Source: Macrostomum lignano (lineage: Eukaryota). Taken from it: DNA of 64,000 nt. Numbering within the stretch: the first letter of the stretch is position 1; each line of letters opens with the position of its first letter. The notes beneath the pieces were generated by a model, which searched no databases, had not been told where the DNA came from, and saw only the letters and a program-made list of their open reading frames with translations. The position numbers and the translations under genes are program-made. The DNA is taken from assembly GCA_002269645.1 (NCBI GenBank), contig NIVC01001936.1, positions 89,194 to 153,193 of the forward strand, written 5' to 3'. This document shows positions 17,001-20,000 of this stretch, one piece after another.

Positions 17001-20000
17001 CTTCATAGCTTCATCATCGCTTCGCATCTAAGTTTCAAGACAGAATCGATCATAGCCTCTTATCTGACGTCTTATGGGATTTGCAAAGCAACGTCTAGCT
17101 TTAGTGTAACGTTATTAAATAGATGATTAGAGAAACTATTAATACGCTTCTATGAAGTAATGAAGACGGTTATCGCGGACATTAGAAGTAGTAGGATGCT
17201 ACACTGCAAGGCTGGAGGGGGACTGTCGAAGATAAATACACGGATGAGATGGTAAAATGACAATTTTACAACAGCATCCTTGGAAACTCGGCCTCCAGCC
17301 TTGCAATGTAGCGTCCTACTACTTCTGTTGTCCGTGACTCGGATATAACGGCCGCTAAACAGATTATGAACTTTGTGCTTGTGTATATTACACTGAAGGG
17401 TTGCTTCGCAAATCGCGAAGCGGTCGCCGCCTACGTTTACCCACTTTCATGCATTCAATTGGAGCCTCTGGTGGGGAGGGGGGCATTGCGATCGCAAAAA
17501 AAATTGGCGCCTAAATAATGCGCCGATGCCGGTGCCGCCCATTGGCCTGCAACCGAGCCGCACGGGACTGCGGGGATAGTTGGTTGTACCAACCCTCGCA
17601 CTCAGTACAAGTCTGTGCCGGTAGCCGCAACCGATCCTCCCGTTTCCTGCTGCCGTACATGGCGGGAGCGGCATCCGGCAGCGTGTTGTAATCTTCTAGG
17701 GTGTACTTAGCACGCTTAGAAGGCACGCTGTGCGCGGCAGCGGTGCTGGCAACTTGGGGACTGAACTGCTCAGGAACAGTGGCCACTTCGTCCGGGAACG
17801 AATCCGCGGCACCAGCACCATCACGGAGGTCTTCCATATCTGGCGTGTCGTAGTCATCAGGATCCTGGCTATCTGGCGCGCCATCATCACGGAGGTCTTC
17901 CATATCTGGCGTGTCGTAGTCATCAGGATCCTGGCTATCTGGCGCGCCATCATCACGGAGGTCTTCTGCATCCGGCGTAGCAAAGTCATCAGAGTCGTGG
18001 CTAGCGTCCGAACCCAGCCAATTAATGCGTTGCTTACGTAGCTCGTCATCCAATAGTCTACTCCAGTCCATGCGCGTTGTTAGCTGCAAGTGAAGTTTTG
18101 TGTTGAATGTGAGGTATGCAGTTGAGATTGTATTTATAAACTAGTATTATACGTAAGTCAGTTAGCCAGTCAGTCAGTAAGTCAGTCAAGCAGTCAGTCA
18201 ACCGTCGAACGGGTAAATTTTGACACGCTTTGCGTGATTACATACATAAACTGCATTTTCAGCTTCGTTTGATCAAACAAGAACGGAGACAGTAATCACT
18301 AATGAAGCACTACATTCTCAAATTTGTTTCACGGAGTCTTGTATAATTATTTAAAAAACGTACATACACCTGCTGCGATAAATGTAAACGAGAGACAAAC
18401 AGTGGTAAACGTTGCAGATAACAGTTTCCTGATTGGCGCAATGTATAACTGGTTACACTGTATTCGATTTTTCGATTCAATAAACACCGAGAGGCTTGGT
18501 CTACCACAAACACAATACGCCGTGCCCTACGCTCCTATCATTACTACTACTAGCAATAAGTTAGTAGTAACTATAGTACTGACTATTACTCTACTATACT
18601 AGCTGGTAGTTGAAAGGTAGTTCTAGGTAGTTCAAAGCTACTAGGATATGTGCTAGTAGTAGTAGCAGTAGTAGCAGCAGTAGCTGTGTTACGAATTGTA
18701 GTTACTAAAGTATAATTTTAATGTAATTGTAATACAATTGTAAATTGTAATACAATTATAATTGTAGTATATATACTTCGCATTACAAGGTACATAAAGT
18801 GCATATACTTCACAGAGGAGTTATTTCATTCAGCTGAATCCAAACTGTGGGTGCGGCAACAAGGCGATCTTTTGATCAGATACAACGCACATGCCTACGA
18901 CTCGAGAAAGCGGCACAGCCAGGATCGGCCAGTCTCCAGGATCACCAAGCGGATCCGATAGGAGTCGCCGAACATGCGCGAAGCGACAACCGCGGTTCTC
19001 GGACGTCGGGGGCACAGCCGCCAAAGCTTGTAGGGGATCGATGAGCTCCTGCACTGGTAGAACGTGTACGGTCGCCCTCACATTGTTGTCATGCGCATGA
19101 AGTTCGGCGACGCGAGCAAAAATGAAGGACGTACTTGAACATGCATCAGTAATGGCTACGAAACTAGAAATCACTTTTCTGTTCGCTTCCGGCGGGACGA
19201 ACACCTCGACTGTGGCTCCCGATGCCAGGACCGCTGAGCGCCAGCCGTCGAACATACCAACAGGGCGTCGAAGCACAACTCCGTCAATCTTCAGCAATTC
19301 AGTGCGCGGACGATCCGGATGCGGTACAGGCATGCCACCTGGGACGGCATCTTGCAGTCGAACTCGCGCTTGGAGTTTGGCAAACTCGCGCTCAACAACG
19401 CCTACTAACTCCACATCGTTCCGACGCGTTCCATGGAGCTGGTCACGCAGGCGTGTGTGCATGGATTCGAATATACCTGCAGATAGTTTATGTACGGGCC
19501 CAGCCAACTTAGCAGAAGTGACCATGTGCCTGCATACATGATGTGCGTTGTATGTCAACGCTCTGAGGGAATAAAGCTGGTCTAAATGCTCATGGAATTG
19601 CCGCAGCGAGATGTCGACGTGCCGCAGCTCACTAAGAGGCGCGCCCTCCAGCGTCAACCAGAAACAGGCCGATGAAAGCACCATTAGTTGCTGGTAGTGA
19701 TCAGCGGGAAGAAAGTCTTCCAATACTAGCGGCACAATGGCAAACAACCAGATCTCCAGCTCATGGCCGCGCAAGTGTCGCAAATCCCTTAGAGGACGAA
19801 TAGTGTGGCGTTGAACACAACTGGGTAGCCGAAGTTTCTGCAACTCAAGTTGCACATTGTCAATTGTGGCCTGAGAGCTGAGGTCCGGACAGTTGGTTAT
19901 GCCACGGTCGGGCTTGTCGGGCCGGTCTAGGAAGAGTTGGTTTACACAGTTGGTGTAGATAACAGGATGGAGTGCCGCGCATGATATCAAAGCCGCATAG

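What the first reader, a model, noticed from the sequence alone, without database searches (positions are those of the whole stretch)
17511..18083. A CACTA/EnSpm transposon carries its own Sae2/CtIP-like DNA end-processing gene
Seen: between the transposase and the accessory ORF, on the same strand and inside the TIRs, is an intact ORF of about 186 aa. Its C-terminal 46 aa ([46 protein letters not shown]) align without gaps to the CtIP/Ctp1/Sae2 C-terminal core as I remember it from human CtIP ([46 protein letters not shown]). The RKxExR-L, TCxECE-Y and RHR motifs are all kept at the same spacing. The N-terminal coiled-coil/oligomerisation region of host CtIP is absent and replaced by acidic 22-aa repeats containing SQ and TP dipeptides. 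The ORF also stops before the conserved TPxxFW CDK-switch motif. Established: CtIP/Sae2 activates Mre11 (MRN/MRX) endonuclease to process hairpin-capped or protein-blocked DSB ends and starts resection; En/Spm excision footprints are explained by hairpin intermediates at the donor site. Inference: the element may encode a captured minimal CtIP mimic, possibly not under CDK control. It could steer repair of the excision site (opening hairpins or favouring homologous gap repair, which restores the element) or act as a dominant-negative. I do not recall a described DNA transposon with this cargo, but I could not search the literature.
Basis: partly seen in the sequence, partly recalled or inferred. 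Interest (0 to 1): 0.92.

Follow-up and report, generated by a model that had tools for sequence, protein, structure and literature searches.

The report
Transposon-borne CtIP tail gene, now broken
A 10.5-kb cut-and-paste DNA transposon, probably in a Macrostomum-like flatworm genome, carries a real but distant copy of the C-terminal domain of the DNA-break-processing factor CtIP. In this copy a recent nonsense mutation cuts the gene short, so the "minimal CtIP mimic" reading does not hold.

Summary
A 186-aa ORF lies on the minus strand (18071 to 17514, TAG at 17513-17511) inside a 10,475-bp transposon (13202-23676). It sits between the transposase and downstream ORFs.

Its C-terminus is homologous to CtIP. 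A phmmer search of 1.84 billion proteins returned two meaningful hits: Macrostomum lignano CtIP (E 1e-8) and a metagenomic CtIP that passes Pfam SAE2 (E 2e-6). hhalign against the human CtIP tail gives 98.4% probability.

The key correction concerns the stop codon. Homology continues in frame for 40 more codons after the TAG ([32 protein letters not shown], 71% identical to M. lignano). The TAG aligns with a CAG Gln codon. The ORF end is therefore a recent nonsense mutation, not a designed truncation before the CDK-switch region. The transposase also appears frameshifted, so this copy is decaying.

Against M. lignano CtIP, synonymous sites are saturated, dN/dS is about 0.19, indels are in frame, and the amino-acid rate is not accelerated. 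This argues for long purifying selection and against a recent capture from the M. lignano-type gene.

The element is CMC-type, but has CCC termini and a 2-bp duplication rather than CACTA ends. Recurrence in other copies could not be tested.

The parts
13200..13201 (.). Left copy of the 2-bp target-site duplication (TG)
   Evidence: Removing the element and one TG restores the 29-bp minisatellite unit ...ATTCTT|TGATGATGCC.
13202..13223 (+). Left terminal inverted repeat, CCCGCCTGGCCCAATCATCCGG
   Evidence: Inverted-repeat pair I4: 22 nt, 91% complementary, with 23655-23676.
13224..13690 (.). Left subterminal repeat region (CCGGA-rich short motifs, 61-bp x 3.6 tandem array at 13461-13683)
   Evidence: Matching short inverted motifs occur at the other end.
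14446..16515 (-). Downstream 'accessory' ORFs (333 aa with 4 x 44-aa repeats, 154 aa, 124 aa). Function unknown.
   Evidence: No significant Pfam match.
17388..18071 (-). Full ancestral reading frame of the CtIP-like gene: 186 codons, TAG, 40 codons, TAA
   Evidence: translation; homology across the TAG.
17436..17723 (-). Segment homologous to the CtIP/Sae2 C-terminal domain (KYTLEDYN, RxRxxR, Cxx[26 protein letters not shown])
   Evidence: tblastn of M. lignano CtIP (P0004): 49% over 102 aa, E 4e-23. phmmer. hhalign against the human CtIP tail: 98.4%.
17511..17513 (-). Premature in-frame TAG, aligned with the CAG (Gln) codon of M. lignano CtIP
17819..17966 (-). 66-bp tandem duplication (2.2 copies, 100% identical) encoding the acidic 22-aa repeats
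18131..18138 (-). TATAAATA 67 nt upstream of the ATG: candidate own promoter. An acceptor-like cttgcag lies at 18084-18090.
   Evidence: Read directly. Not tested functionally.
18830..21320 (-). DDE transposase in two overlapping frames (19860-21320 and 18830-20029). A +1 shift is needed near 19950.
   Evidence: Motifs LSFDGF, MFDAPA...CDKC, HHVCRH...GIFES. Weak Pfam DUF1258 (E 3e-6) and DUF4218 (E 8e-3). Frames shown.
23300..23654 (.). Right subterminal repeat region (CCGGA-rich motifs)
23655..23676 (-). Right terminal inverted repeat
   Evidence: pair I4.
23677..23678 (.). Right copy of the 2-bp target-site duplication (TG)

Best explanation
SHOWN:
- Window 13202-23676 is a 10.5-kb DDE transposon of the CMC (CACTA/EnSpm-Mirage-Chapaev) group.
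- It is inserted antisense in an intron of a UGGT gene. The host genome is Macrostomum-like.
- Between its transposase and its downstream ORFs it carries a gene whose last ~105 codons are homologous to the C-terminal domain of CtIP/Sae2. In CtIP/Sae2 this domain binds Rad50/MRN and activates Mre11.
- The ancestral frame was about 226 codons, or about 204 without a very recent 66-bp duplication. It consisted of an acidic N-terminal part with no detectable relatives and no coiled-coil/tetramerisation similarity, followed by the CtIP tail down to its natural end.
- In this copy a CAG-to-TAG change ends the frame 40 codons early. The transposase also seems frameshifted. This individual copy is therefore a young pseudogene.

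INFERRED:
- Synonymous sites against M. lignano CtIP are saturated, while non-coding repeats shared with M. lignano are still 72-81% identical.
- The frame, all the family motifs and a host-like amino-acid rate are retained.
- From this I infer that the gene was not copied recently from the resident M. lignano-type CtIP. It has been under purifying selection for most of its history, most simply as a maintained accessory gene of the transposon family.

PROPOSED MECHANISM (not tested):
- In intact copies the monomeric CtIP-tail protein engages Rad50/MRN at the breaks the transposase makes.
- It then modulates Mre11 clipping or opening of hairpin-capped or blocked donor ends, and so the repair outcome.
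- Without the tetramerisation domain it would be a weak activator or a competitor of host CtIP.
For: Homology:
- P0002, M. lignano, E 9.9e-9; P0003, E 1.9e-6.
- P0003 passes Pfam SAE2 with 37.6 bits.
- P0004 has a CtIP-like N-terminal coiled coil plus this tail.
- P0004 lies in an ordinary host context and has at least 3 exons.
- E 4e-23 across the stop.
- hhalign 98.4%, E 8e-15.

Premature stop.

Selection:
- 104 codons, pS 0.71, pN 0.31, dN/dS about 0.19. For the 34 post-stop codons, pS 0.79 and pN 0.23.
- relative-rate test gives 13 versus 11 unique changes, p = 0.84.
- shared repeats at 72-81%, against 59% nucleotide identity for the gene.

Element:
-.

Mechanism background:
- The Sae2 C-terminal domain is the minimal unit that promotes MRX and binds Rad50, but oligomerisation is needed for full activity (PMC6167383).
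- CtIP 790-897 alone gives no SSA in cells (PMC7261161).
- No revertants after Ac/Ds hairpin-forming excision were recovered in yeast lacking Mre11 or Sae2 (PMC3299998).
Against: - Only one copy is available, and it is broken.
- Recurrence in other copies or families could not be tested: searches returned nothing, and searches were empty.
- The source species and its own CtIP are not known. The constraint could have acted in a host gene (a distant lineage or an unannotated paralogue) before a recent capture or horizontal transfer.
- The window sequence alone does not reach the Pfam SAE2 cut-off.
- The conserved TQ site (M. lignano PTQCM, human STQTCM) is IE here.
- The N-terminal 115 codons have no detectable relatives, and their open frame is uninformative because other frames are open there too.
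- There is no expression evidence.
Confidence: 0.55

Rival explanations
1. Transduplicated host exon without function for the element. The element, or an ancestor in another host, picked up the last exon of a CtIP gene by the kind of gene-fragment capture known for CACTA, MULE and Helitron elements. The motifs and low dN/dS are inherited from the host gene, and the fragment is now simply decaying.
For: - The homologous part corresponds to the single last exon of M. lignano CtIP.
- An acceptor-like cttgcag sits just upstream of the ORF.
- The copy already carries a nonsense mutation, and the transposase carries a frameshift.
- The relative-rate test cannot tell host-borne from element-borne constraint.
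- CMC elements are known to transfer horizontally (PMC4079192, title and abstract).
Against: - Nucleotide identity to the only available flatworm CtIP is 59%, with saturated synonymous sites. Neutral repeats shared with that genome are 72-81% identical. A recent capture from the resident orthologue is therefore unlikely.
- This reading needs an unseen divergent paralogue or a horizontal transfer.
- The element is autonomous in type, not a Pack-type shell.
- The gene has its own ATG and a TATA box, and ends at the natural CtIP stop.
Confidence: 0.3
2. One reading: a purposely minimal CtIP mimic that ends before the CDK-switch motif and so escapes CDK control.
For: The literal ORF ends 5 codons after RHR. 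The Thr of the switch motif is absent.
Against: - In-frame homology continues for 40 codons after the TAG at 71% identity.
- TAG aligns with CAG.
- Thr is replaced by Ala in host M. lignano CtIP as well.
Confidence: 0.04
3. The CtIP-like segment does not belong to this transposon. It would be a nested insertion or rearranged host DNA that happens to lie between the inverted repeats.
For: - The flanks are AT-rich and microsatellite-rich (18090-18830).
- A 59-nt-arm inverted repeat lies just downstream, at 17173-17337.
Against: - No terminal repeats, target-site duplication or poly(A) tract frame the segment.
- It has the same strand as all the other element ORFs.
- The M. lignano CtIP locus has quite different neighbours.
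Confidence: 0.07
4. Chance resemblance of a basic, Cys-containing low-complexity tail to CtIP.
For: Pfam SAE2 scores only E about 1 on the window sequence alone. A C2H2 zinc finger appears at E 0.4 in the PDB search.
Against: Library-wide E 1e-8 and 2e-6. E 4e-23 across 102 aa. hhalign 98.4%.
Confidence: 0.01

Closest known systems
CtIP / Ctp1 / Sae2 (Pfam PF08573, SAE2 C-terminal domain), specifically Macrostomum lignano CtIP (PAA88737.1 / PAA54340.1)
   Same: - The C-terminal ~105 residues are colinear: KYTLxDYN, RxRxxR, CxxCE, 20-aa spacer, RHR, APxFF, PPS/TP, CMKxGKRRxRPL.
- The natural stop is at nearly the same place.
- Identity is 49-51%.
   Different: - No N-terminal coiled-coil or tetramerisation domain.
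- Unrelated acidic N-terminus.
- Intronless, with its own ATG.
- Sits inside a transposon rather than between ACS and EMP24 genes.
- The TQ site is changed to IE.
- A premature TAG in this copy.
CMC(T) DNA transposons (CACTA/EnSpm, Mirage, Chapaev)
   Same: [quoted passage not shown]
- Subterminal repeat arrays.
- Short TSD.
- Several same-strand ORFs besides the transposase.
   Different: - Termini are CCC...GGG, not CACTA...TAGTG.
- The TSD is 2 bp. From memory this is Mirage-like; canonical EnSpm gives 3 bp.
- Only weak Pfam matches (DUF1258, DUF4218), and none to Transposase_21.
DNA transposons that carry host-derived accessory genes (e.g. fungal TET/JBP-encoding hAT, Harbinger, EnSpm/Plavaka and Helitron families, PMC12730594; from memory also RPA-like genes in Helitrons and ULP1-protease genes in MULE/CACTA elements)
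   Same: An autonomous-type element with an extra gene of cellular origin that plausibly manipulates how the host handles the element's DNA.
   Different: - The cargo is a DSB end-resection cofactor domain, which I did not find described.
- It has been seen so far in a single, defective copy.
Pack-type transduplication (Pack-MULE, gene-fragment-carrying CACTA and Helitron elements; from memory)
   Same: A piece corresponding to one host exon lies inside a transposon.
   Different: - The element encodes a transposase.
- The fragment is highly diverged from the available parent gene yet keeps its frame and motifs.
- Pack fragments are usually near-identical to the parent and quickly degenerate.

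Membership tests
CtIP/Sae2/Ctp1 C-terminal domain (PF08573) | Match to the Pfam SAE2 profile above the gathering score (19.8 bits) | tested here: not met
   The window sequence scores 10.9 bits (47 aa) and 10.4 bits (110 aa read through the stop). The full ORF gives no hit. For scale, the human 46-aa stretch scores 19.1, the M. lignano tail 19.2 and P0003 37.6.
CtIP/Sae2/Ctp1 C-terminal domain (PF08573) | Significant sequence homology to bona fide family members | tested here: met
   - phmmer E 9.9e-9 (M. lignano CtIP) and 1.9e-6 (P0003, which passes Pfam) against 1.84e9 proteins.
- tblastn E 4e-23.
CtIP/Sae2/Ctp1 C-terminal domain (PF08573) | CxxC and RHR motifs with conserved spacing | tested here: met
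   TCTECE-(19)-RHR, the same spacing as in human, M. lignano and P0003.
CtIP/Sae2/Ctp1 C-terminal domain (PF08573) | CDK site in the (S/T)Pxx(F)W motif (human T847, Sae2 S267) | tested here: not met
   The motif lies after the TAG and reads APIFF. The Thr is Ala, as it is in M. lignano CtIP (APNFF). P0003 has TPPHFW. A PPSP site follows.
CtIP/Sae2/Ctp1 (whole protein) | N-terminal coiled-coil tetramerisation domain | tested here: not met
   tblastn of P0004 and P0003 finds only the tail in the window. The N-terminal 93 aa do not score above shuffles against P0004 (84/500) and score only marginally against P0003 (8/500).
CtIP/Sae2/Ctp1 (whole protein) | Stimulates Mre11-Rad50 endonuclease and binds Rad50/Nbs1 | not testable with these tools
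   Needs biochemistry.
CMC (CACTA/EnSpm-Mirage-Chapaev) transposons | [quoted passage not shown] | tested here: met
   LSFDGF ... MFDAPA ... CDKC ... HHVCRH ... GIFES in the joined frames. Definition from PMC12730594.
CMC (CACTA/EnSpm-Mirage-Chapaev) transposons | Profile match to Tnp2/EnSpm transposase families | tested here: inconclusive
   Only sub-threshold hits: DUF1258 at 27.6 bits (cut-off 33.1) and DUF4218 at 16.5 bits (cut-off 27). Database searches for relatives returned nothing.
CMC (CACTA/EnSpm-Mirage-Chapaev) transposons | TIRs and a 2-5 bp TSD | tested here: met
   22-nt TIRs, 91% complementary. A 2-bp TG duplication restores the minisatellite unit.
Canonical CACTA/EnSpm | CACTA...TAGTG termini and a 3-bp TSD | tested here: not met
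   Termini are CCCGCC...GGCGGG and the TSD is 2 bp.
Pack-type transduplicate | Non-autonomous shell; fragment near-identical in DNA to a resident parent gene | tested here: inconclusive
   The element encodes a transposase. Nucleotide identity to M. lignano CtIP is 59% with pS 0.71. The CtIP of the source genome itself could not be obtained.

The most novel reading that the evidence does not exclude
A family of CMC-type DNA transposons in macrostomid flatworms keeps, under its own purifying selection, a monomeric CtIP C-terminal-domain protein. This protein would engage Rad50/MRN at transposase-made hairpin-capped or blocked breaks and so steer repair of the excision site. It would be a transposon-encoded regulator of DSB end resection.
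Probability: 0.35. Interest if true: 0.8.

Novelty: new variant of a known kind. Interest (0 to 1): 0.55.

Why it matters
Cut-and-paste transposons depend on host double-strand-break repair. Whether the donor site is resected and copied back from the sister, or simply joined, decides whether the element gains copies and what footprint it leaves.

Elements are known to carry host-derived helpers such as RPA-like proteins, proteases and TET/JBP dioxygenases. I found no report of one carrying a piece of the resection-initiation machinery.

If intact copies exist and are selected, this would be a natural experiment. It would show what a tetramerisation-less CtIP tail does to MRN in vivo: activator, recruiter or competitor. 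It would also be a direct handle on how a CMC/Transib-like transposase's hairpin ends are processed.

If it is only a captured exon, it is an ordinary transduplicate.

Tried and rejected
Searches that found nothing:
- Word-indexed protein searches with the ORF, the transposase and a three-sequence CtIP-tail alignment. The last one missed even P0002 and P0003, which are in the collection, so these negatives carry little weight.
- Exact look-up of the 186-aa ORF.
- Two scans of JGI metagenome contigs, one with the CtIP-tail alignment and one with the transposase.
- No second copy of the ORF or element exists in the window.
- No Rfam family in the window.

PDB sequence searches:
- With the ORF and with the profile they found no CtIP tail chain, only chance or zinc-finger-like hits.
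- Structure comparison was therefore not pursued, and no structure was predicted. The CtIP tail has no solved relative to compare with, and the alignment has only three sequences.

Rejected hits and hypotheses:
- The best hit (P0001, E 1e-18, 18 stretches) is a translated minisatellite. I rejected it as a repeat artefact.
- A short intron explaining the TAG was considered and rejected. There is no GT donor near it, and the gap to the M. lignano sequence is only 2 codons.
- A short intron joining the two transposase frames was considered. The only GT..AG at the switch point spans 21 nt, so a 1-nt frameshift or assembly error is more likely.
- Retroposition of a CtIP mRNA: no poly(A) tract or flanking duplication was found. 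The homologous part lies in one exon in M. lignano, so intron loss cannot be scored.
- The species could not be pinned down beyond 'Macrostomum-like'.
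Full report
**1. What is at the coordinates**

- The ORF is on the minus strand. The ATG is at 18071 and 186 sense codons follow. The TAG is at 17513-17511.
- The product reads [20 protein letters not shown], then acidic repeats, then ...[69 protein letters not shown].
- The acidic 22-aa repeats come from a 66-bp tandem duplication at 17819-17966. It has 2.2 copies at 100% identity, so it is very recent.
- Other frames are also open across this repeat. Openness of the N-terminal half therefore says nothing about selection.

**2. 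The element**

- A 22-nt inverted repeat, CCCGCCTGGCCCAATCATCCGG, lies at 13202-13223 and 23655-23676 and is 91% complementary. It bounds 10,475 bp.
- The element sits in a 29-bp minisatellite. Removing it together with one copy of the flanking TG restores the repeat unit exactly, so the target-site duplication is 2 bp.
- Both ends carry arrays of short CCGGA-rich motifs.
- All long ORFs inside are on the minus strand.
- Two overlapping frames (19860-21320 and 18830-20029) together give a DDE transposase with the motifs LSFDGF, MFDAPA...CDKC, HHVCRH and GIFES. [quoted passage not shown] That clade makes 2-5 bp duplications (PMC12730594).
- Pfam gives only sub-threshold hits to DUF1258 and DUF4218.
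- The two frames can be joined only by a +1 shift near 19950. No plausible intron exists there, so the transposase of this copy looks frameshifted, or the assembly has an indel.
- The element is therefore CMC-type. It is not a canonical CACTA element, because its ends are CCC...GGG and its TSD is 2 bp.
- It lies antisense in an intron of a UGGT gene. The UDP-g_GGTase exon is at 12117-12641 and the Glyco_transf_24 exon at 25595-26215.

**3. Is the CtIP resemblance real?**

- Directly against Pfam it is weak. The full ORF gives no hit. The tail alone scores SAE2 at 10.9 bits with E about 1, against a cut-off of 19.8.
- The equivalent human 46-aa stretch reaches only 19.1 bits, so the profile has little power on this segment.
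- BLASTP against the human tail gives 19/50 identities, 41.6 bits and a pairwise E of 4e-10.
- The decisive result is an exhaustive phmmer search of 1.84 billion representative proteins with the last 100 residues. It gave three hits.
  - One (P0001) is a translated minisatellite and is rejected.
  - P0002 (E 9.9e-9, 47% identity) is a Macrostomum lignano protein, PAA54340.1.
  - P0003 (E 1.9e-6) is a 315-aa metagenomic protein with an N-terminal coiled coil. It passes Pfam SAE2 at 37.6 bits.
- P0004 (PAA88737.1) is a longer model of the M. lignano gene. It has a CtIP-like N-terminal coiled coil and at least three exons. It lies between acetyl-CoA synthetase and EMP24 genes, so it is an ordinary host gene.
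- A profile of the three tails aligns to the human CtIP tail with 98.4% probability and E 8e-15. The alignment spans CxxC, RHR, the FW motif and CM..G.
- Homology to the CtIP/Sae2 C-terminal domain is therefore established by transitive and profile evidence. Only the curated Pfam threshold is not met by the window sequence on its own.

**4. The stop codon is a lesion**

- tblastn of M. lignano CtIP against the window runs straight through the TAG. The window reads ...[43 protein letters not shown] and M. lignano reads ...GRHRDNQRPPVQAPNFFAIEMPPTPEPAPTQCMKFGKRRHRPLRML. This gives 49% identity over 102 aa and E 4e-23.
- The frame stays open for 40 codons to a TAA at 17390-17388. That is close to the natural CtIP end.
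- The TAG aligns with the CAG Gln codon of M. lignano.
- The post-stop segment is 71% identical, compared with 47% before the stop.
- The region equivalent to human TPENFW...STQTCM is therefore present. The claim that the gene 'stops before the CDK switch' reflects one recent C-to-T change in this copy.
- The Thr of that motif is Ala here, but it is Ala in the M. lignano host protein too. P0003 has TPPHFW.
- Changes specific to the window copy include the conserved TQ becoming IE.

**5. History**

- A Nei-Gojobori comparison with the M. lignano last exon covers 104 codons. It gives 59% nucleotide identity, pS 0.71 (saturated), pN 0.31 and dN/dS about 0.19. For the post-stop part, pS is 0.79 and pN 0.23.
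- The two indels in the alignment are in frame.
- With P0003 as outgroup, the window copy has 13 unique amino-acid changes and the host M. lignano protein has 11 (p = 0.84). There is no acceleration.
- Three families of non-coding interspersed repeats in the window match the two M. lignano loci at 72-81% identity. Paralogues within M. lignano are 86% identical.
- The host is therefore M. lignano or a fairly close relative, and neutral divergence from M. lignano is far below saturation.
- Together these results make a recent copy of the resident M. lignano-type CtIP unlikely. They also exclude long neutral drift.
- Two possibilities remain:
  - (a) an old capture kept under selection in the element lineage;
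  - (b) a recent capture from a distant host or an unannotated divergent paralogue, possibly followed by horizontal transfer.
- These data cannot separate (a) from (b).
- The homologous part lies in one exon in M. lignano. Intron loss therefore cannot be used to distinguish capture of cDNA from capture of genomic DNA.

**6. Gene signals (read from sequence, untested)**

- TATAAATA lies at 18138-18131, 67 nt upstream of the ATG.
- An acceptor-like cttgcag lies at 18090-18084.
- No canonical AATAAA lies close downstream of the TAA.
- A 59-nt-arm inverted repeat lies about 50 nt downstream.

**7. Mechanism (inferred)**

- In Sae2 the phosphorylated C-terminal domain is the minimal unit that promotes the MRX endonuclease, and it binds Rad50. 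The monomeric fragment has only residual activity, and oligomerisation is needed in vivo (PMC6167383).
- Human CtIP 790-897 alone supports no SSA in cells (PMC7261161).
- Hairpin-forming Ac/Ds excision in yeast yields no revertants without Mre11 or Sae2, although Pso2 does most of the hairpin opening (PMC3299998).
- A transposon-encoded CtIP tail without the tetramerisation domain would therefore most plausibly bind Rad50/MRN. It would act as a weak local activator or recruiter at transposase-made ends, or as a competitor of host CtIP.
- I lean to MRN engagement at the donor break. The direction of the effect is open.

**8. What could not be done**

- Recurrence of the gene in other element copies could not be tested.
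- The host's own CtIP, expression data and biochemistry were not available.
- Word-indexed searches and both metagenome scans were empty.
- Literature searches found no description of CtIP/Sae2-like cargo in a transposon.

**9. Verdict**

- The homology and the location inside a transposon are real and unusual.
- The specific 'minimal, CDK-independent mimic' story is wrong, and this copy is dead.
- Whether the family maintains the gene is the open question, and it is readily testable.

Noticed in passing
window 19860-20029 (about 19950), minus strand: The two transposase frames overlap and can be joined only by a +1 shift inside the conserved '[13 protein letters not shown] | NCVNQLF' stretch. 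This is a probable frameshift or assembly indel, so the transposase of this copy looks inactive.
   Followed up: partly
window 2604-3335, 12117-12641, 25595-26215 (+): These are exons of a UDP-glucose:glycoprotein glucosyltransferase (UGGT) gene (Thioredoxin_12, UDP-g_GGTase, Glyco_transf_24). Its introns are packed with minisatellites. The transposon sits antisense in one intron, inside a 29-bp minisatellite.
   Followed up: yes
window 15910-16436 (ORF 15514-16515, minus): A 132-bp tandem repeat of 4 copies, 99% identical, lies inside a 333-aa element ORF. It encodes KRKK-rich 44-aa units followed by a Cys-rich unique tail. There is no family match. The further ORFs at 14939-15403 and 14446-14820 are also unassigned.
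   Followed up: partly
window 17173-17231 / 17279-17337: An inverted repeat with 59-nt arms (83% complementary, 47-nt loop) lies about 50 nt downstream of the ancestral TAA of the CtIP-like gene. Its nature is unknown (hairpin, small palindromic insertion or terminator-like).
   Followed up: no
window 24879-25289, 1243-1369, 29421-29940; L001 and L003: Three interspersed or tandem repeat families are shared with two Macrostomum lignano loci at 72-81% identity. Paralogues inside M. lignano are 86% identical. This is the only pointer to the source organism.
   Followed up: partly
L001 10001-13315 and L003 10001-13072 (M. lignano NIVC01000176.1, NIVC01002929.1): The two M. lignano CtIP gene models differ. 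PAA88737.1 (481 aa, partial) includes the N-terminal coiled coil. PAA54340.1 (395 aa) starts later and lacks it. Both are named only 'hypothetical protein', and the tail scores just under the Pfam SAE2 cut-off (19.2 versus 19.8 bits).
   Followed up: partly
window 39283-39861 (+), 61030-61812 (-): Other host genes are present: exons with an Ion_trans domain (a cation-channel-like gene spanning roughly 33-41 kb) and a forkhead-domain exon.
   Followed up: no
tool behaviour: The top hit of the exhaustive search (P0001, 1636 aa, 18 stretches) is a translated minisatellite and a false positive. The word-indexed search with an alignment containing P0002 and P0003 did not return those same proteins.
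   Followed up: yes
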